From positions 124,001-188,000 of the IMG/VR virus record IMGVR_UViG_3300043411_000921: DNA of 64,000 bases; one strand, given 5' to 3'. A program made the translations under genes and the position numbers. This document shows positions 40,833 to 47,153 of the stretch, in pieces. Under the pieces are notes generated by a model. The model was given only the letters and a program-made list of their open reading frames with translations, was not told where the DNA came from and ran no database searches. The stretch's first letter is position 1. Every line of letters begins with the position of its first letter.

Positions 40833-41029
40833 TGTGAATCTTCATCCTCTTCCATTGGAACGATCTCATACCAATCTTCCACATAGTTTTTACTTACCAC
40901 AATGACATTGAACCCATTGGAGTCTGCTGCGAGAAGGCGAACGGTGTTTTTTAGTGGATCTTCGTCAAGATATACACGGAACCGCGAAGGAATGTTGTAC
41001 TTGTTTTTGAGCAGCGTTCCTGGTTTCAT
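40829..41029 (-). CDS. PG-x-LL array protein
   Basis: MKPGTLL, TAATG-coupled to the upstream gene. Confidence 0.65.
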   Translation of the reverse strand: MKPGTLLKNKYNIPSRFRVYLDEDPLKNTVRLLAADSNGFNVIVVSKNYVEDWYEIVPMEEDEDSQ

Positions 41030-42093
41030 TATCGGCGTGGGAAGGTGTGACGGCCACGATTGTAGGAATAAGCGGGGAAAACCGGCATGTTGACCATTGA
41101 AGTTTGAATCTCTTCGGTGAAACAAAAGCCAGCAGCTTTGATGCAATCGAGCACAGATGCCTTTTCCGTGGCACGGAACACCCAGGTGCGGGTAGAGTCC
41201 ACATAAGACCGATTGGACGCCTGGATATTCTTCTTGAGGGCTTCCACGAGCTTTGGAGTCTTGCCAGCAACCCAGGGAACGTCCAGGGTGATAACCGTGG
41301 GCCAGCAAACCACCCTTGCACCATCTCGGGCTGCTGCAATAGAGTTTTGCTGAGGATTTACAGCGATCCACTCCTCACACATCTTGATGATGTTGGGAAC
41401 ATCCCCCTCAAAGCACGGCCAATACTCCATCACAACTTCAACAAAAGCCTTGTGAGACTTCGCTGGACAAGTGAAAGTCCGACCGGAGAGCTTGGGAAAA
41501 ACAACTCCGGGAATCTTGCGCATCGCATTCCACCCAGCCTTGTTCTTGCTTCCAGTCAAACTGATAAGGCCATTTTCAAACTTCAGGGTTGCTTCACCCG
41601 TGCTGCTCTTTCCAGCAAGCACGCCAGCAAGGCCAGGATAACCCAGAGACTTGACAACTTGAATCAAGCAAGTCTTGTTTTGGGTGCTGATTCCAACGAA
41701 GGAGAGCATGAAGTCTACGATCTTGACAATGGGACGATAATCCTCACCAGCAAGATAAAACCCACTGTCGCCCTCGTTCTTTTCCTGGAGCTTCTCGTTC
41801 TTCTGCATGAGGAGTTCGAGGGTTGCAGCCCAGATGGGTTGAATGGCGAGGGGAAGTCCGTCAGGAACCACAGACATTCCATAGAGTGTGGCTGCTGAGA
41901 AATTTGCGGGAACAGTGCGAGCAAAAAGCGCGGTGTCCTTCTTCGCGCAGATGGGGCCGATGCCACGCTCCCAGGAAGCGGGATCGGTCAATGCGGCGAA
42001 GCATCGAGAACAATGACGGACATCATTGCAACTCCGAGTGATGCTCGGAAACATGTTGAGGATATCTTGAAAGCTGGTCGTGGCGTTCTTCAT
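41029..42093 (-). CDS. DUF6011-type zinc-finger early protein
   Basis: CSRC..LTDPASWERGIGPIC. Confidence 0.8.
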   Translation of the reverse strand: MKNATTSFQDILNMFPSITRSCNDVRHCSRCFAALTDPASWERGIGPICAKKDTALFARTVPANFSAATLYGMSVVPDGLPLAIQPIWAATLELLMQKNEKLQEKNEGDSGFYLAGEDYRPIVKIVDFMLSFVGISTQNKTCLIQVVKSLGYPGLAGVLAGKSSTGEATLKFENGLISLTGSKNKAGWNAMRKIPGVVFPKLSGRTFTCPAKSHKAFVEVVMEYWPCFEGDVPNIIKMCEEWIAVNPQQNSIAAARDGARVVCWPTVITLDVPWVAGKTPKLVEALKKNIQASNRSYVDSTRTWVFRATEKASVLDCIKAAGFCFTEEIQTSMVNMPVFPAYSYNRGRHTFPRR

Positions 42094-42134: not shown

Positions 42135-43322
42135 TTATCTGGCCTGTGCGATTTTTTCTGGGAGGGCTACATTCCAGAGATTTGCCTTGGCTGTCCTTGA
42201 CTTGGTAAACCCCAAAGACTCCAACTTCTTTGCCATTAGCTGAGGCTTATAGTTCGAAACATGAACCAAGCATTTCTCTTCCTTCAAAAACAACATCCTC
42301 GCTTGGATAATCTCCTGAAGGGAAGACTTGGGCTCTTTATCTGTCCAGGGTCGAAGGGAAGAAAAAAACTCCCGGTCCCCATCCTTCAAAGCTCGAACCT
42401 CTTCCAACCCAATCTTCAAATTAGGCTTGTTCTTCTTCAACCAAGAGAAGTAAATCTCATTGACCTTCTCAAAAGATGTATTGAATGCCGGATACTTCGT
42501 TACCGAGTCAATAACTTGTGTAGCTTCATCAAAAAATTCACAATAGTTTTCAAAATGTTTTAGGTAAGCGGAGCAAAGTTTTTCTAGTTGAGCACGTTCT
42601 GCCCCTTTGGCTCTGTCAGAGGAAAGAAGTCTGTGGAGAACAATGTTTCTAACGCCAACTGGGACGGGTTCGGTTTTCATTTTTTCTCTGACATGCTCGA
42701 TTGTTCCAGTTGACCAGTCAGACAGAGAGGACTTAGCCGCCATCTTTGATTTGGTCGTTGTTGTTTTTTGTGTCTTGGTTGATTTCCTTGATTTTAGTGC
42801 GTTGAGGAATTTTTCTGGTAGGTCTTGAATTTCATTCGGACAGACTTCGCCATAAGTGCCACGAGTATGTTTGCTTGGTGGAATAACAACATAACCGTCT
42901 TGGCCTCGTGTATCTACCTTGTCCGCCAAATGGGATGCAGTGTTTTTTGTCGGGGTCGATGTCCAAAACCAAAAATGCCACCCACCAGATCCAGTCCGAT
43001 AGTGAAAAGTCGAAGAAAGTTCCTTTATGATTGGGTGATCTGCCGCATCAACATCAACAACAATAAGATATTTCCCAGTTTTTTCAGATTTTCGTCCTGT
43101 TGCGAGGCCAAAGTTCATTTTGTGACTGAGAGAAAACCACTCTTCAACCTTTTCTGGTTTATTGCTGGCAATGATTTTCCAATTGTAACGAAAGAGTGGG
43201 TGTTTTCCAGGAGAAGCGCAGTTTTGTTCGCCACACGAACAAGTGTTGTTAAGCCGAATCGAATAAAGTGGAAGTATGTGAAATTTGTTTTCCAGAATGA
43301 TTTGTTTAATTGATGATGGCAT
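42135..43322 (-). CDS. bifunctional DNA primase/polymerase (Prim-Pol)
   Basis: CSCG..C.SPGKHP, NFGLATG, VVDVD, TGSGGWH, DTRGQDGYVVIPPS, GVRN. Confidence 0.9.
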   Translation of the reverse strand: MPSSIKQIILENKFHILPLYSIRLNNTCSCGEQNCASPGKHPLFRYNWKIIASNKPEKVEEWFSLSHKMNFGLATGRKSEKTGKYLIVVDVDAADHPIIKELSSTFHYRTGSGGWHFWFWTSTPTKNTASHLADKVDTRGQDGYVVIPPSKHTRGTYGEVCPNEIQDLPEKFLNALKSRKSTKTQKTTTTKSKMAAKSSLSDWSTGTIEHVREKMKTEPVPVGVRNIVLHRLLSSDRAKGAERAQLEKLCSAYLKHFENYCEFFDEATQVIDSVTKYPAFNTSFEKVNEIYFSWLKKNKPNLKIGLEEVRALKDGDREFFSSLRPWTDKEPKSSLQEIIQARMLFLKEEKCLVHVSNYKPQLMAKKLESLGFTKSRTAKANLWNVALPEKIAQAR

Positions 43323-43360
43323 TTCAACCTCAAAGTATCAGGTTGAAATGCCATCATCAA
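43310..43360. repeat. perfect 21-bp inverted repeat covering the Prim-Pol start codon and promoter
   Basis: ttgatgatggcatttcaacct-N9-aggttgaaatgccatcatcaa. Confidence 0.9.
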
Positions 43361-43575
43361 GAGACTCTTTCGACCACCGCGCCCGCAGGGATCGCCCCCG
43401 CGTCCGTGGTGGAGCCGCGAGTGCCGCCGCTCGTGCGGTAGTAGTAGGTCGTCGAGGGCGCGGGAGCGCCGACGCGCGGGGCGAAGGCCCCGCGGAGGGG
43501 CGCAGGGATGGGCTTATACAGCCCAGGGGCGATCGATGGCGAGGGCGGGGCGAGGCCTGCGGTATAGGTGCTCAT
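43357..43575 (-). CDS. small Pro-rich protein (high-GC island)
   Basis: GAGGT RBS, GC-rich codons. Confidence 0.65.
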   Translation of the reverse strand: MSTYTAGLAPPSPSIAPGLYKPIPAPLRGAFAPRVGAPAPSTTYYYRTSGGTRGSTTDAGAIPAGAVVERVS

Positions 43576-44660
43576 GGCGGCACCTCACGAGAGCGTCGGG
43601 GTCGAGGAGTCCCACCGCAGCCACAGGCCCGCGGCATAAATCCAGTACTCGGTCGTGCCGTCGAGCGTCTGGCCATTGGCCCGGCCCGCCACGGTGGCCC
43701 ACCGGATGCCGCGCGCAAATCCGACCCACCCCGTCGTGGTGGACGGCGCGCCCGCACACATCACGGGGACCGGCAGCGGCACCTCGTACCCGCTGCTAGG
43801 CAGCGCGCCGCCCTGCTCGCCTTCGGGCGGCGCCAGCCGCCCGTAGGTGCCGAAGAGCGACGCGAAGGTGACCCGCTGGTTGCTGCCAGCCCCGACGAAT
43901 CGCTTGTAGATCAGGGCGTAACCCGTCTGGAGGGCCACCCCGGCTGCCGCGTAGACCGTCAAACCCGTGGCGTTGTAGTACCCGACCCACAGGGGTGGGT
44001 CCGTGTCGCTCGGGTCGGGCGAGTCGAGGGGTACGTCGGCAAGGAGAGTGCGGACATTGCCGCCACCGCTCGGGAGGCACATGAGTCGCCAGCCGAAGTC
44101 GTCGATGTCGTCTGCCGAGATGAAGAGCCGCCCGGGCGTTGCCGTGAATGCCGACGCTGCCGAGAAAAGCTCCGTCGCGTCCGTCGCCGTAGGCAGCACC
44201 GTAGCGGTGCCACCCGTGACGAACCCCGCCGCGCTGCGAGAGATGGTCCACGCGGCATCGCTCGCGCCGCGCTGGAAGAGCCACTCGCGGCTTGAATCCG
44301 GCGAACGCACGGTGAACCACGCGGAGGTGTTGCCGAGGTTGCCCGCGCCGCTACCGCCGCTGCCGTAGGGGTTGGCGCTGAGCGGTGGGTTGGCGCTGAG
44401 CGGTGCGCCGGTGCGGTCGGTGTAGGTGGTCGCGTCCGACCATCGCGTGATGACCCACCCCGCGGAGAGCAGGGTGTCGATGAGCGCGTCGACGGCGACA
44501 GCGCCCGACGCGGGCGAGGATACGTGTGTGATAGTGGCCATGTGTCAGCTCCCGATCATCGAGGCAGCGGCGCAGATAAGCCAACGGTATGAGCCATCGG
44601 TGGGCAAGAGTTGCGCCGCCGAGATGAGGGTCTGCTGGTCGGCTGCCGTTGGGGCTGGTG
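43370..44660. other. high-GC horizontally acquired island
   Basis: Counted 60-nt lines inside are 65-80% GC versus 30-47% just to the left. Confidence 0.85.
43585..44541 (-). CDS. putative tail/receptor-binding accessory protein (high-GC island)
   Basis: Gly/Ala/Thr/Trp-rich beta protein downstream of the tail fibre; GGAG RBS. Confidence 0.7.
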   Translation of the reverse strand: MATITHVSSPASGAVAVDALIDTLLSAGWVITRWSDATTYTDRTGAPLSANPPLSANPYGSGGSGAGNLGNTSAWFTVRSPDSSREWLFQRGASDAAWTISRSAAGFVTGGTATVLPTATDATELFSAASAFTATPGRLFISADDIDDFGWRLMCLPSGGGNVRTLLADVPLDSPDPSDTDPPLWVGYYNATGLTVYAAAGVALQTGYALIYKRFVGAGSNQRVTFASLFGTYGRLAPPEGEQGGALPSSGYEVPLPVPVMCAGAPSTTTGWVGFARGIRWATVAGRANGQTLDGTTEYWIYAAGLWLRWDSSTPTLS

Positions 44661-44685
44661 TAGTGAGATTTTCCAAGTATGCCAT
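44545..44685 (-). CDS. 46-aa chimeric mini-ORF at the island junction
   Basis: MAYLENLTTPAPTAADQQTLISAAQLLPTDGSYRWLICAAASMIGS; TAGTTA at 44703-44698. Confidence 0.45.
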   Translation of the reverse strand: MAYLENLTTPAPTAADQQTLISAAQLLPTDGSYRWLICAAASMIGS

Positions 44686-44708
44686 TGTGTTAAAATCTAA
44701 CTACAGTT

Positions 44709-47111
44709 TCACCCAAAAAACACGGCTGAAAATAGCGCATAGTCGGAAATGCCTCCTCCGCTCTTGTTGACCCTCAATTCCAAAACTCTTGAAGAACCAG
44801 TGGCAACAAAAGAAGCTGTTTTGTGCGTTGGGGTTGTCTCAGTCCATGACAAAGAAGAAAGAGATGATGAGTTAACAAGATCATACAATTCCACACTTCC
44901 AGTGACTCCGGCTACGGAAGCAAAACCAATGCCTTCGAGTGTGTAGGATGGAGAATTTAGATCTGTAAAAAGAGCGTAACCCGCGATGGTGCTTGCAGAA
45001 AGGGTTGTTGTGACAACCCCAGCCAGAATTGGGATTTTACTTGAGGCAGAGAGTTCCCACTGACCAATTGTGTTGTAGTTTGCTGTAATGCCGGAACTTC
45101 CTGTCAAGAAAGGATTTCCGTTTGTAGTAGTGTTCAAAGAACCCGTTATGCCACCAAAGACTTCAAATGAACCTGTTACTTGAACGGAGCCGGAAGCAAC
45201 TCTAAAAACATCGTGCCGATTAAAACTACTATCCCCGTCCCCGACAACAAAAAGAGAGGAAGCATCTTGAATGTTGAATTTTCCGAATGCGGCTTGTGTC
45301 GTTGTGGGGTCAAGATTCCCAGCGGTTTCTCCTTCTGCGATTGTTCCAAGCCCCGCAGCGAAGCTTCCACTGCCATTCGCAATCGTTTGCCAACCTGTGG
45401 TGTGGGAGGCTGGGCCGTTCGTTAAAGTGTAGTAGCCTTCGGCGTGGGAATAGCTGCCGTTGGTTGATGAACCAACCCCTTCTGCGTGGGAATGCTCTGC
45501 GCCAGTGGTTGTTCCATTTCCCTCAGCGTGAGAAAAATTACCATTTGCTGTTGAAAAAAAGCCTTCAGCGTGCCCACCGAGAGCGTTAGATTTTGCGAAA
45601 TAACCTTCTGCGTGTGCAGCGTATGCTGCTGCTGTTGTAAACACACCTTCCGCATGGGAAAAGAACCCAGATGCTTGTGTGCTTGAACCTTCGGCGTGAG
45701 TGGCTTGGCTTGATGCAATAGTGTCTTGGCCTTCGGCGTGAGAGTTGTCACCGGATGCAATGTTTCTTATTCCCTGGGTTACGCTTCCAGTGATTTCGGC
45801 CCCCAAAGAGGCACTTAGTTTTGCAATTTCGATAGAGCTGGTCGTGTAAATGATTGTGCTGTTTATTTCAGACCAGAGGCTTGTTCCACCAGAAGAGCCA
45901 GAAATTTCCCACTGGCCGTTTGTGTTGTAGACTGTTGTGATACCCGGCCCACCAATCAAAAACGGACTACCATCGACGGTACCACTCAAAGAACCAGTGA
46001 TTTTTGAAGAGATGAACGACCCAGTTACTTCAACCGAGGTGTCATTAACTCTGAAAATATCAGATCTGAGAAAATCATCATCATCTGTTCCGTTTCCAAC
46101 AACGAACAATGAGAAATCGTTGTTGCGAAGATTATACTTTCCAACTACATTTTGTCCAGAGCCAGATGCGATTGTTCGGATACCGGAAGCGTGTGAAAAG
46201 TCGCCTGGGGTGTCGGTGTAGGAACCTTCGGCATGTGACCAGTTTCCAATAGCGTTTGTCTCAAATCCTTCAGCGTGCGATCCCACCCCAAACGCTTCTG
46301 CGCCTTCCCCTTCTGCGTGGTTATAATCGGCATGTGCTCTTGTCATTCTCCCTTCTGCGTGGGAATAATCGCCAGAAGCAATTGTCATTGTGCCTTCTGC
46401 ATGGGAACCAAGACCTGAAGAAGTCGCCATTCTCCCTTCTGCGTGGGAATTGATTCCACTGGCGAGTGTACCATCTCCCTCCGAGTGACCACCAGCACCT
46501 GATGCCGTTGTTGCAAAACCTTCTGCGTGCGAATGATTTCCAGAAGCAGTAGAATTGTACCCTTCCGAATGAGAATAGTCGCCCGAAGCGACTCCATATT
46601 GGCCTTCCGAGTGACTACACAAACCCGAAGCCACTGTTTCTTCTCCTGATGCGACAGAAGATCCGGTGGCATAGCTGCCAATTCCAGCGATCACACTAGA
46701 TCCTGTGACAACGAGACTGATTTCCCCAACAAATTCATTTCGGATTTGAACAGATCCAGTGGAGTAGGTACTACCTGAGATGTCTGAGAACCAGATTTGG
46801 GCACTGCCCCCACTTGCGCCAGAACCATCAACAGACAGGTTCCCAGAGACGTGTAGATCCCCTCCAAAAACCGCAATAGTAGGCGTGCTACCTCCCTTGC
46901 CCCCAACCGATCCAGAGACGTAGAAAAAGGCGTCAGAGCCGATTGGCGAGGTGTCAAAAATAGCAGGGTTGATATTCCCCTGGTTGGCTGGAGTTCCTTG
47001 AGCACTCAAAGGATAAACAAGAAGGCATTCGGCGGAACCCGCATTGGCTCCGCTGACAATCAGCTTGTTTACTTGAATTTGATCGGAACGAAAATCTGGT
47101 GAGTTTGGCAT
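44709..47111 (-). CDS. tail fibre / adhesin with YadA-head-like 14-aa SHAEG repeats
   Basis: Two blocks of (S/G)HAEG..T.A.G repeats and many VTGS motifs; TAGTTA upstream. Confidence 0.85.
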   Translation of the reverse strand: MPNSPDFRSDQIQVNKLIVSGANAGSAECLLVYPLSAQGTPANQGNINPAIFDTSPIGSDAFFYVSGSVGGKGGSTPTIAVFGGDLHVSGNLSVDGSGASGGSAQIWFSDISGSTYSTGSVQIRNEFVGEISLVVTGSSVIAGIGSYATGSSVASGEETVASGLCSHSEGQYGVASGDYSHSEGYNSTASGNHSHAEGFATTASGAGGHSEGDGTLASGINSHAEGRMATSSGLGSHAEGTMTIASGDYSHAEGRMTRAHADYNHAEGEGAEAFGVGSHAEGFETNAIGNWSHAEGSYTDTPGDFSHASGIRTIASGSGQNVVGKYNLRNNDFSLFVVGNGTDDDDFLRSDIFRVNDTSVEVTGSFISSKITGSLSGTVDGSPFLIGGPGITTVYNTNGQWEISGSSGGTSLWSEINSTIIYTTSSIEIAKLSASLGAEITGSVTQGIRNIASGDNSHAEGQDTIASSQATHAEGSSTQASGFFSHAEGVFTTAAAYAAHAEGYFAKSNALGGHAEGFFSTANGNFSHAEGNGTTTGAEHSHAEGVGSSTNGSYSHAEGYYTLTNGPASHTTGWQTIANGSGSFAAGLGTIAEGETAGNLDPTTTQAAFGKFNIQDASSLFVVGDGDSSFNRHDVFRVASGSVQVTGSFEVFGGITGSLNTTTNGNPFLTGSSGITANYNTIGQWELSASSKIPILAGVVTTTLSASTIAGYALFTDLNSPSYTLEGIGFASVAGVTGSVELYDLVNSSSLSSLSWTETTPTHKTASFVATGSSRVLELRVNKSGGGISDYALFSAVFFG

Positions 47112-47153
47112 AGTTTGTGTGGGTAACTATGCCAAAACAAGGCCAGAAAGGTT

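What the first reader, a model, noticed from the sequence alone, without database searches (positions are those of the whole stretch)
43370..44685. High-GC tail cassette captured behind a native late promoter through a chimeric mini-ORF
Seen: an abrupt ~1.3-kb GC-rich island directly after the tail fibre. The junction falls inside a 46-aa ORF whose first codons are phage-like and follow TAGTTA, while the remainder is GC-rich. The 318-aa gene has an exact 18-bp tandem duplication (44369-44404, PLSANP twice). Inference: recent capture of a receptor-binding module from a high-GC phage or prophage, which is the best host clue in the window.
Basis: partly seen in the sequence, partly recalled or inferred. 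Interest (0 to 1): 0.6.

Follow-up and report, generated by a model that had tools for sequence, protein, structure and literature searches.

The report
High-GC tail-gene swap in jumbo phage
A 1.3-kb, 70%-GC stretch in this 46%-GC giant phage is real: it holds two tail genes taken from unrelated high-GC phages, which overwrote the phage's own versions and are still being swapped in patches, an ordinary kind of tail-gene mosaicism in an unusually clear form.

Summary
Window 43,370-44,660 is about 70% GC in a 241-kb phage contig of 45.7% GC, and it is the only such island there. The 46-aa, 318-aa and 72-aa ORFs and the exact 18-bp duplication are all present.

It is not an assembly chimera. Contigs from other studies and two independent public assemblies carry the same junctions.

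It is not a new insertion. Relatives of this jumbo phage all have fibre, a ~316-aa gene, a ~70-aa gene and PrimPol in this order. The resident pair was overwritten by alleles 90% (nt) identical to ~72%-GC phage contigs.

Scars remain. The native TAGTTA motif and ATG start are kept. A probable fragment of an older allele is fused to the last ~10 codons of the donor's upstream gene. The last six codons of the small gene are low-GC.

A sister strain is 97-99.7% identical in the flanks but only 64-90% identical in patches inside the island. This points to ongoing gene conversion with co-occurring high-GC phages.

The 318-aa protein has the fold of the phage JBD30 gp47/gp48 lateral tail-fibre proteins (Z 19.5).

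The host clue is weak. "Late promoter" is untested.

The parts
44709..47111 (-). 800-aa probable tail fibre (native, GC3 0.40). Its last ~130 aa (44712-45131) are a jelly-roll tip domain homologous to a separate 159-aa protein of the high-GC phages.
   Evidence: PHROG 25468, 5 stretches. tblastn 42-47% aa identity to the L007/L008 159-aa proteins. AF2 pLDDT 75.7 with CBM/lectin-like matches at Z about 9.5. Single copy in the contig.
44698..44703 (-). TAGTTA motif 12 nt upstream of the mini-ORF ATG. The same motif and spacing precede the fibre ATG (47124-47129).
   Evidence: Conserved at the same place in L010 and L011. 6 of 8 copies in the window lie 5-70 nt upstream of long-ORF starts. Promoter function is not shown.
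44545..44685 (-). 46-aa chimeric mini-ORF. 44677-44685 is the native start (Met-Ala-Tyr). About 44572-44661 is a probable in-frame fragment of an older family allele (GC3 about 0.66). 44545-44576 is the 3' end of the donor's upstream 159-aa gene, with its GGGAG ribosome site and a stop 4 nt before the next ATG.
   Evidence: The ATGGCATAC start is shared with L010/L011. A sub-profile HMM aligns residues 9-39 to family positions about 115-145 (15.2 bits, E 0.0015 against 1,518 window ORFs), while the N-terminal model scores -0.4. Donor homology starts at 44568-44576. The GC-rich part is identical in L015.
43585..44541 (-). 318-aa tail protein with the JBD30 gp47/gp48 fold. It is the core of the high-GC island and the only copy of its family in the contig.
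   Evidence: 171 relatives, none named, none with Pfam. AF2 pLDDT 86.9, pTM 0.88. 8rk3 chain c: Z 19.5, 249 aligned, next best Z 5.4. dN/dS 0.28-0.37. Single copy.
44369..44405 (-). Exact 18-bp tandem duplication (PLSANP twice) in a low-confidence surface loop of the 318-aa protein.
   Evidence: TRF: period 18, 2.1 copies, 100%. Absent in L007, L002, L008 and L015. pLDDT 62 for residues 41-50. The X2 contig covers it without gaps.
43357..43575 (-). 72-aa small gene that always follows the ~316-aa gene, in jumbo and high-GC phages alike. It is high GC except for its last six codons.
   Evidence: 13 homologues share the motif TTYxYR...G.RG.TT. Donor homology ends at about 43,372.
43357..43374 (-). 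The last six codons of the 72-aa gene encode the donor-type C-terminus (VVERVS against VVERVT) in low-GC synonymous codons. This is a remnant of the earlier resident allele and marks the right crossover.
   Evidence: Alignments. The crossover lies elsewhere in L015 (about 43,440) and in L014 (about 43,403). L014 ends AVIERIS, also in low-GC codons.
43310..43360 (-). Perfect 21-bp inverted repeat (9-nt loop) abutting the island. It contains the stop codon of the 72-aa gene and the start codon of PrimPol.
   Evidence: Longest perfect hairpin in the window. RNA dG -35.4 kcal/mol, z -8.5, no U-tract. Present in L015, not in L014, L011, L004 or L025.
42135..43322 (-). Native Prim-Pol gene (395 aa), the conserved right flank of the slot.
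   Evidence: PF09250, 2.3e-23. 99% aa identity in L015, 81% in L014, 52% in L010/L011, always just downstream of the small gene.

Best explanation
The island is a two-gene tail cassette: a 318-aa protein with the fold of the JBD30 gp47/gp48 lateral tail-fibre (baseplate-arm) proteins, plus a 72-aa companion. It sits in a slot that is ancestral in this jumbo-phage clade (fibre, ~316-aa gene, ~70-aa gene, PrimPol). In this lineage the resident pair was overwritten by recombination with DNA of unrelated ~72%-GC phages.

The left junction is illegitimate, or rests on micro-homology at a shared Leu-Ile-Ser/Cys-Ala-Ala stretch. It fuses the native start and a stub of an earlier allele to the last ~10 codons of the donor's upstream gene. 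The right junction is a homologous crossover six codons before the end of the small gene.

Expression is inferred to come from native upstream signals. Translation of the mini-ORF ends 4 nt before the 318-aa ATG, behind the donor's own GGGAG, so the foreign gene is probably translationally coupled.

Now that the slot holds high-GC sequence, it keeps exchanging patches with the pool of co-occurring high-GC phage alleles. This keeps it unameliorated and makes it hypervariable. The likely pay-off is a change in adsorption specificity.

Shown: composition, homology, synteny, junction anatomy, independent assemblies, mosaic pattern, fold. Inferred: recombination mechanism, coupling, role in receptor binding, shared host.
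For: Real and unique island.

Donor origin: 83% nt identity to L007 and 90% to L027/L028, all 72% GC and in donor-type tail context. GC3 0.87 against 0.40 in the flanks.

Ancestral slot: L010, L011, L016 and L017 have low-GC 328-aa plus 73-74-aa genes between fibre and PrimPol. L004 and L025 do too.

Scars: conserved TAGTTA plus Met-Ala-Tyr start. Mid-gene fragment with E 0.0015. Donor 159-aa gene tail. Low-GC last six codons.

Not a chimera: in X1, Logan contigs 42300-43633 and 44246-45800 span both junctions. In X2 (another study), contigs of 6.8 and 18 kb span both junctions, and X6 and X7 span them partly. The stretch is held by 20 runs from 10 studies. L015 and L014 are independent assemblies with the same right junction, and L015 also has the same left junction.

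Ongoing exchange: window against L015 is 97-99.7% identical in the flanks and 100% at the left junction, but 64-90% in 60-nt patches inside, each strain alternately nearer to different donors. The L014 island is 89% identical although its PrimPol is 77%. The two strains fall in different subclades of the tree.

Donors co-occur: loose ends that read the donor's own flanks in X2, X6 and X7, extra depth in mid-island in X1, and L007 and L015 come from one metagenome assembly.

Functional gene: dN/dS about 0.3 and sole copy in the contig.

Fold: Z 19.5 to a JBD30 baseplate chain. The gp47/gp48 arms bind the type IV pilus (PMC11445458).
Against: The 'older allele' fragment in the mini-ORF rests on a 31-residue match with a borderline E-value (0.0015 with the sub-profile, 0.037 with the full profile).

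Interior mosaicism is read from assembled contigs. Where jumbo and donor alleles share k-mers, assemblers could cross between them inside the island, so some patches in L015 could be artefacts.

No sequence-level link to JBD30 gp47/gp48, and no test of virion location or receptor binding.

The predicted 318/72 complex gave no answer.

Direction of transfer is clear for this island. It is not clear for the related clade B alleles, where L025 has native GC.

No transcript data for the promoter or the coupling.
Confidence: 0.75

Rival explanations
1. There was one old capture with no further exchange. The island entered the common ancestor of the window, L015 and L014 lineages once, and all differences since then are point mutations under diversifying selection.
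For: The left junction and the mini-ORF are identical in the window and L015. The right junction region is shared with L014. dN/dS of 0.3 is rather high.
Against: Flanks of the window and L015 differ by 0.3-3%, while 60-nt patches inside differ by 10-36%, with sharp boundaries and alternating nearest donors. The right crossover lies at three different positions in three lineages. The L014 island is more similar to the window than its flank is (89% against 77%). GC3 of 0.87 shows no amelioration despite 15-23% flank divergence from L014.
Confidence: 0.1
2. Assembly chimera. A high-GC phage fragment was spliced into the jumbo contig by the assembler.
For: Both phage types co-occur in the samples and share k-mers in the island. 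The record is a metagenome-assembled contig estimated 66% complete.
Against: An internal insert with both flanks continuing, junction-specific sequence and intact reading frames. Unbranched Logan contigs cross both junctions in the source run and in another study. Two further public assemblies carry it. It is held by 20 runs from 10 studies.
Confidence: 0.02
3. A self-mobile element or 'moron': an autonomous unit (homing element, IS, integron-like cassette) that inserted between fibre and PrimPol.
For: Sharp GC contrast. A strong hairpin sits exactly at one end.
Against: No transposase, integrase or endonuclease, and no terminal repeats or target duplication. Both genes are homologues of the genes that occupy the slot in relatives. 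No promoter-like or terminator-like site inside the island. The hairpin lacks a partner at the other end and occurs nowhere else in the window.
Confidence: 0.05
4. Native gene or reverse direction. The high-GC version is original to jumbo phages and was exported to the high-GC phages, or its composition is due to selection.
For: The family is present in jumbo phages at native GC (L010/L011, L025), so the module as such is old in both groups.
Against: GC3 of 0.87 matches the donors' genome-wide 72% GC, not the jumbo genome. The homology extends into the donor's upstream gene and intergenic ribosome site. Dozens of 90%-identity clusters sit in high-GC, 35-57-kb contexts.
Confidence: 0.03

Closest known systems
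Horizontal exchange of tail-fibre genes among unrelated phages (classic mosaicism, e.g. P2/Mu/lambda/T-even fibre genes; from my own knowledge, not checked here)
   Same: A host-recognition module is replaced by a homologous one from an unrelated phage. Junctions lie at gene ends or conserved linkers. Flanks are conserved and the cassette is hypervariable.
   Different: The swapped gene is a gp47/gp48-fold arm protein plus a 70-aa partner, not the fibre itself. Scars of two successive alleles are visible. All players are uncultivated.
Pseudomonas phage JBD30 gp47/gp48 'tail fibre forming proteins' (PDB 8rk3; PMC11445458)
   Same: Same size (305-317 aa) and same fold (Z 19.5, 249 residues aligned, rmsd 3.4). 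Encoded in the tail or baseplate gene block.
   Different: 11-13% sequence identity and no profile hit. JBD30 has two paralogues that form heterodimers, whereas here there is one gene plus a 72-aa ORF. JBD30 is a siphophage. Pilus binding is not tested here.
Morons (extra genes with their own signals and deviant GC, inserted between conserved phage genes; from my own knowledge)
   Same: Abrupt compositional island between two conserved genes.
   Different: The slot is already occupied by homologues in all relatives. There is no promoter or terminator of its own, and it uses the native start through the mini-ORF.

Membership tests
JBD30 gp47/gp48-like tail-fibre-forming (baseplate arm) proteins | Shared three-dimensional fold over most of the chain | tested here: met
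   VIA-align against 48,161 chains: 8rk3_c Z 19.5, 249 of 318 residues aligned, rmsd 3.4, next best Z 5.4. Foldseek top hits are 8rk3_G and 8rk3_K.
JBD30 gp47/gp48-like tail-fibre-forming (baseplate arm) proteins | Detectable sequence homology | tested here: not met
   A profile of 49 family members against all PDB sequences finds no 8rk3 chain at E up to 10. Structural alignments show 11-13% identity. No Pfam or PHROG hit.
JBD30 gp47/gp48-like tail-fibre-forming (baseplate arm) proteins | Encoded within the tail/baseplate module | tested here: met
   Directly downstream of the fibre in jumbo phages. In high-GC phages it lies between the tape-measure-containing block and the endolysin, and in L026 next to a Sheath_initiator gene.
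JBD30 gp47/gp48-like tail-fibre-forming (baseplate arm) proteins | Virion component forming lateral arms of heterodimers that bind the type IV pilus | not testable with these tools
   Only indirect evidence: BFVD look-alikes are annotated 'virion structural protein' and an Atlas cluster is named 'putative minor tail protein'.
Horizontally exchanged tail-gene cassette (allelic replacement) | Composition unlike the host genome and like the donor | tested here: met
   GC 0.70 and GC3 0.87, against genome 0.457 and flank GC3 0.40. Donors have 0.72 GC and GC3 0.91.
Horizontally exchanged tail-gene cassette (allelic replacement) | Homologous gene occupies the same slot in relatives | tested here: met
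   L010, L011, L016, L017, L004 and L025 all have fibre, a 316-328-aa gene, a ~70-aa gene and PrimPol in that order.
Horizontally exchanged tail-gene cassette (allelic replacement) | Nearest relatives of the cassette are in unrelated genomes, while the flanks follow the phage phylogeny | tested here: met
   The window allele is 90% nt identical to L027/L028 (donor context) against 87% to sister strain L015, and 32% aa identical to L010/L011. The tree places jumbo alleles at 3 or more positions.
Horizontally exchanged tail-gene cassette (allelic replacement) | Junctions confirmed in independent data | tested here: met
Moron | Inserted between genes that are adjacent in relatives; own promoter and terminator | tested here: not met
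   The slot is occupied in all relatives. No promoter-like or terminator-like site inside the island.
Diversity-generating retroelement target | A second, near-identical template repeat in the genome | tested here: not met
   The island DNA and the family profile each match only once in the 241-kb contig. The contig is only 66% complete, so this is not absolute.

The most novel reading that the evidence does not exclude
A clade of ~45%-GC freshwater and wastewater jumbo phages shares host cells with ~72%-GC phages or prophages and keeps 'borrowing' their baseplate-arm alleles. Gene conversion is frequent enough to outrun amelioration, so the slot is a standing window onto the host's other phages. 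The same slot shows alleles at every stage: native GC in L010/L011/L025, half-ameliorated in L004, raw in the window/L015/L014. If this is right, the cassette links an uncultivated jumbo-phage clade to a high-GC host, possibly Myxococcota-like. It would also be a natural example of host-range tracking by serial cassette replacement across a very large compositional gap.
Probability: 0.4. Interest if true: 0.65.

Novelty: new member of a known kind. Interest (0 to 1): 0.5.

Why it matters
Tail-gene swapping is how phages change hosts, and this is a very legible natural example. The 26-point GC gap marks donor and recipient DNA base by base. Junctions, leftover scars of two successive alleles and later conversion patches can therefore be read directly.

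The case shows that a jumbo phage and much smaller high-GC phages draw on one allele pool. This argues that they meet in the same cells, and it gives a testable handle on the host of an uncultivated jumbo-phage clade found in at least ten freshwater, wastewater and estuary studies.

It also defines a large unnamed protein family (over 170 clusters, no Pfam or PHROG) as structural relatives of the pilus-binding JBD30 gp47/gp48 arms.

Tried and rejected
1. I first read the 46-aa ORF as the N-terminus of the resident 316-like gene. A profile of the family N-terminus scores -0.4 bits beyond Met-Ala, so I dropped this. The profile instead aligns residues 9-39 to mid-gene positions (15.2 bits).

2. 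I first suspected a frameshift at the end of the fibre gene. This was a miscount. The ORF ends in frame at the TGA at 44711-44709.

3. Complex prediction of the 318-aa and 72-aa proteins gave no answer (score 0.00). It is evidence neither for nor against binding.

4. blastn and tblastn of the island and the 318-aa protein against 50,697 GenBank phage records found no match.

5. Pfam and PHROG scans of the three island ORFs found nothing.

6. An exact-sequence look-up of the 46-aa product found nothing on record.

8. Host search. One scan of 185,579 species genomes gave a single locus, in a Polyangiales MAG. In that phylum, 3 of 301 sampled genomes matched, two of them distantly. The taxon of the MAG that carries L008 could not be obtained.

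9. The hairpin as a conserved terminator: it is not conserved in L014, L011, L004 or L025 and has no U-tract.

10. The large representative-protein search was not used, because the word search already found the family.

Full report
**Setting.** The window is bases 124,001-188,000 of a 241,399-bp IMG/VR virus record that CheckV rates 66% complete, so this is a jumbo phage. It encodes a DnaB-like helicase, a class II ribonucleotide reductase, a PhoH/PIN protein and a Prim-Pol. It has no close cultured relative.

**1. The observation.**
- The GC island is real. 200-nt windows jump from 0.39-0.45 to 0.63-0.74 between about 43,300 and 44,700.
- It is the only stretch of 0.60 GC or more longer than 350 nt in the whole contig (mean 0.457, sd 0.034).
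- On the minus strand, in order: an 800-aa ORF (47111..44709), a 46-aa ORF (44685..44545), a 318-aa ORF (44541..43585), a 72-aa ORF (43575..43357) and a 395-aa Prim-Pol (43322..42135).
- GC3 is 0.87 and 0.82 in the two island genes, against 0.40 in the flanks.
- The 18-bp tandem duplication is exact (44369-44405).

**2. Where the DNA comes from.**
- The 318-aa protein has 171 relatives in metagenomes, all unnamed and without Pfam domains.
- The nearest lie on contigs of 72-74% GC.
  - L007 is 83% nt identical over window 44568-43370.
  - L027 and L028 are 90% identical.
- On those contigs the gene sits in a tail module: tape-measure-like protein, several unknowns, a 159-aa gene, the ~312-aa gene, a ~68-aa gene, then an endolysin a few genes on.
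- L026 adds a Sheath_initiator gene to this context.
- The homology runs from the last ~10 codons of the donor's 159-aa gene, through its GGGAG and stop-start spacer and the whole 312-aa gene, into the small gene. It stops six codons before that gene's end.

**3. The slot is ancestral, so this is a replacement.**
- Relatives found through Prim-Pol all carry fibre, a 316-328-aa homologue, a 69-74-aa homologue and Prim-Pol in that order. These are L010/L016, L011 (a 260-kb contig), L017, L004 (137 kb) and L025 (308 kb).
- In L010/L011 these genes have GC3 of 0.19-0.29, and the 328-aa gene is only 32% aa identical to the window's gene.
- The C-terminal ~130 aa of the window's fibre are themselves homologous to the donors' separate 159-aa protein (42-47% aa).
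- That domain models as a lectin/CBM-like jelly roll (pLDDT 75.7; Z about 9.5, a common fold).
- The high-GC gene is the only member of its family in the contig.

**4. Junction anatomy.**

Left junction:
- After the fibre stop come TAGTTA, a 12-nt spacer and ATGGCATAC. The motif and the Met-Ala-Tyr start are conserved in L010 and L011.
- Residues 9-39 of the mini-ORF do not match the family N-terminus (-0.4 bits). They match family positions about 115-145 (15.2 bits, E 0.0015 against all 1,518 window ORFs; 0.037 with the full profile).
- Their GC3 is about 0.66, which is intermediate.
- I read this as a stub of an earlier, partly ameliorated allele, shortened by an in-frame deletion. This step is inference.
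- The stub merges with the donor's 159-aa gene tail where both read Leu-Ile-Ser/Cys-Ala-Ala, a possible micro-homology.

Right junction:
- The last six codons encode VVERVS (donors: VVERVT) in low-GC synonymous codons.
- L014 ends AVIERIS, also in low-GC codons.
- The switch to high GC lies at about 43,372 in the window, about 43,440 in L015 and about 43,403 in L014.
- This fits crossovers within a resident allele of the same family.

**5. Not an assembly artefact.**
- The stretch is held by 20 runs from 10 studies of freshwater, wastewater and estuary samples.
- Logan contigs of the source run cross both junctions (42300-43633 and 44246-45800, no differences).
- In an independent study (X2), a 6.8-kb contig and an 18-kb contig cross both junctions. 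X6 crosses both as well, and X7 crosses the left one as a minor variant.
- Two further public assemblies carry the island.
  - L015 (CXWK01008090.1) has Prim-Pol 99% identical.
  - L014 (JACCDT011214077.1) has Prim-Pol 81% aa identical.
- The reads tools served contigs only, so raw read pairs were not seen.

**6. Ongoing exchange.**
- Window against L015: 97-99.7% identical in the flanks and 100% across the GC-rich part of the chimeric mini-ORF. Inside the island, 60-nt windows range from 64% to 100%, each strain alternately closer to different donor contigs.
- Overall the window island is nearer to donor-context L027/L028 (90%) than to its sister strain (87%).
- In the protein tree the two strains sit in different subclades of a 100/100 clade. 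L004 sits in another clade with high-GC L003, and L010/L011 form a long outgroup.
- The L014 island segment is 89% identical to the window, whereas its Prim-Pol is 77%.
- Donor-type phages co-occur.
  - Contig ends in X2, X6 and X7 continue into the donors' own flanks.
  - The middle of the island has about 430 depth against 300 for the flanks in the source run.
  - L007 and L015 come from the same metagenome assembly.
- Caveat: shared k-mers could let assemblers cross between alleles inside the island, so phased reads are needed.
- All allele pairs give dN/dS of 0.28-0.37, so the gene is functional and fairly fast-evolving.
- Across jumbo phages the slot shows every stage of amelioration. GC3 is 0.26-0.29 in L010/L011, 0.38 in L025, 0.62 in L004 and 0.87 here.

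**7. What the proteins are.**
- The 318-aa model (pLDDT 86.9, pTM 0.88) matches one solved structure far above all others. That structure is a 317-residue chain of the phage JBD30 baseplate (8rk3; Z 19.5, 249 residues aligned, rmsd 3.4; next best Z 5.4).
- Foldseek also ranks 8rk3 chains first.
- In JBD30, gp47 and gp48 have similar folds, form three heterodimers per lateral arm, and bind the type IV pilus (PMC11445458).
- BFVD and Atlas look-alikes are 'virion structural' or 'minor tail' proteins.
- There is no sequence-level link. The claim is 'same fold, tail arm-like'. It is not membership in the gp47/gp48 family, and it is not a claim of pilus binding.
- The 72-aa protein is always adjacent and carries a conserved TTYxYR...G.RG.TT motif. 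A predicted complex with the 318-aa protein gave no answer.

**8. How it probably works (inferred).**
- Native signals upstream drive the mini-ORF.
- Its stop lies 4 nt before the 318-aa ATG and just after the donor's GGGAG, so the foreign gene is likely translated by coupling or re-initiation.
- TAGTTA is not over-represented overall (8 copies against 5.8 expected). However, 6 of the 8 copies lie 5-70 nt upstream of long-ORF starts.
  - One precedes the fibre gene at the same 12-nt spacing.
  - One precedes the helicase gene.
  - It is therefore a plausible regulatory motif but is not shown to be late-specific.

**9. Host clue.** It is weak.
- There is no homologue in 50,697 GenBank phage records.
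- A scan of one genome for each of 185,579 species gave a single locus, in a Polyangiales MAG (53-56% aa).
- 3 of 301 sampled genomes of that phylum have any match.
- What the data do support is that the jumbo phage meets ~72%-GC phages or prophages in the same cells.

**10. Verdict.** This is a real, well-supported case of tail-gene allelic replacement with continuing patchy conversion. The kind of event is known. The players, the protein family and the compositional gap are new.

Noticed in passing
window 43310-43360: Perfect 21-bp inverted repeat (dG -35.4 kcal/mol, z -8.5) exactly at the island's right edge. One arm holds the stop codon of the 72-aa gene, the other the start codon and AGG of Prim-Pol. 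It is present in L015 but not in more distant relatives, and has no U-tract. It could be a processing site, a translational lock on Prim-Pol in read-through late transcripts, or a by-product of the recombination.
   Followed up: partly
window 4013, 14284, 20134, 44698, 47124, 61358 (TAGTTA sites): Six of the eight TAGTTA copies lie 5-70 nt upstream of long-ORF starts on the same strand, twice at an identical 12-nt spacing (fibre and mini-ORF). The motif is conserved at the same place in L010 and L011. It is a candidate phage-specific regulatory motif.
   Followed up: partly
window 45093-45894 (fibre shaft): Sister strain L015 lacks about 750-800 nt of the repeat-rich fibre shaft (516-aa against 800-aa fibre). 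In run X6 a contig diverges at 45078, and in X7 the major contig breaks at 44857. The fibre shaft and tip are therefore also polymorphic and mosaic in the population.
   Followed up: partly
L004:6001-7170 and L025:7514-9120: Other jumbo-phage contigs carry alleles of the same cassette from a second clade, at GC3 0.62 (L004, 77% aa identical to 72%-GC L003) and 0.38 (L025). This suggests separate, older exchanges. In L025 the 159-aa tip domain is a stand-alone gene, as in the high-GC phages.
   Followed up: partly
L004:7241-9505, L025:9120-11465: In these relatives Prim-Pol is a 754-781-aa protein, whereas in the window it is a 395-aa ORF followed by a separate 354-aa ORF (41029-42093).
   Followed up: no
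window 43604-44275 in run X1: Unitig depth of about 430 in the middle of the island, against about 300 for the jumbo flanks in the source run. A second genome in that sample appears to share this block exactly.
   Followed up: no
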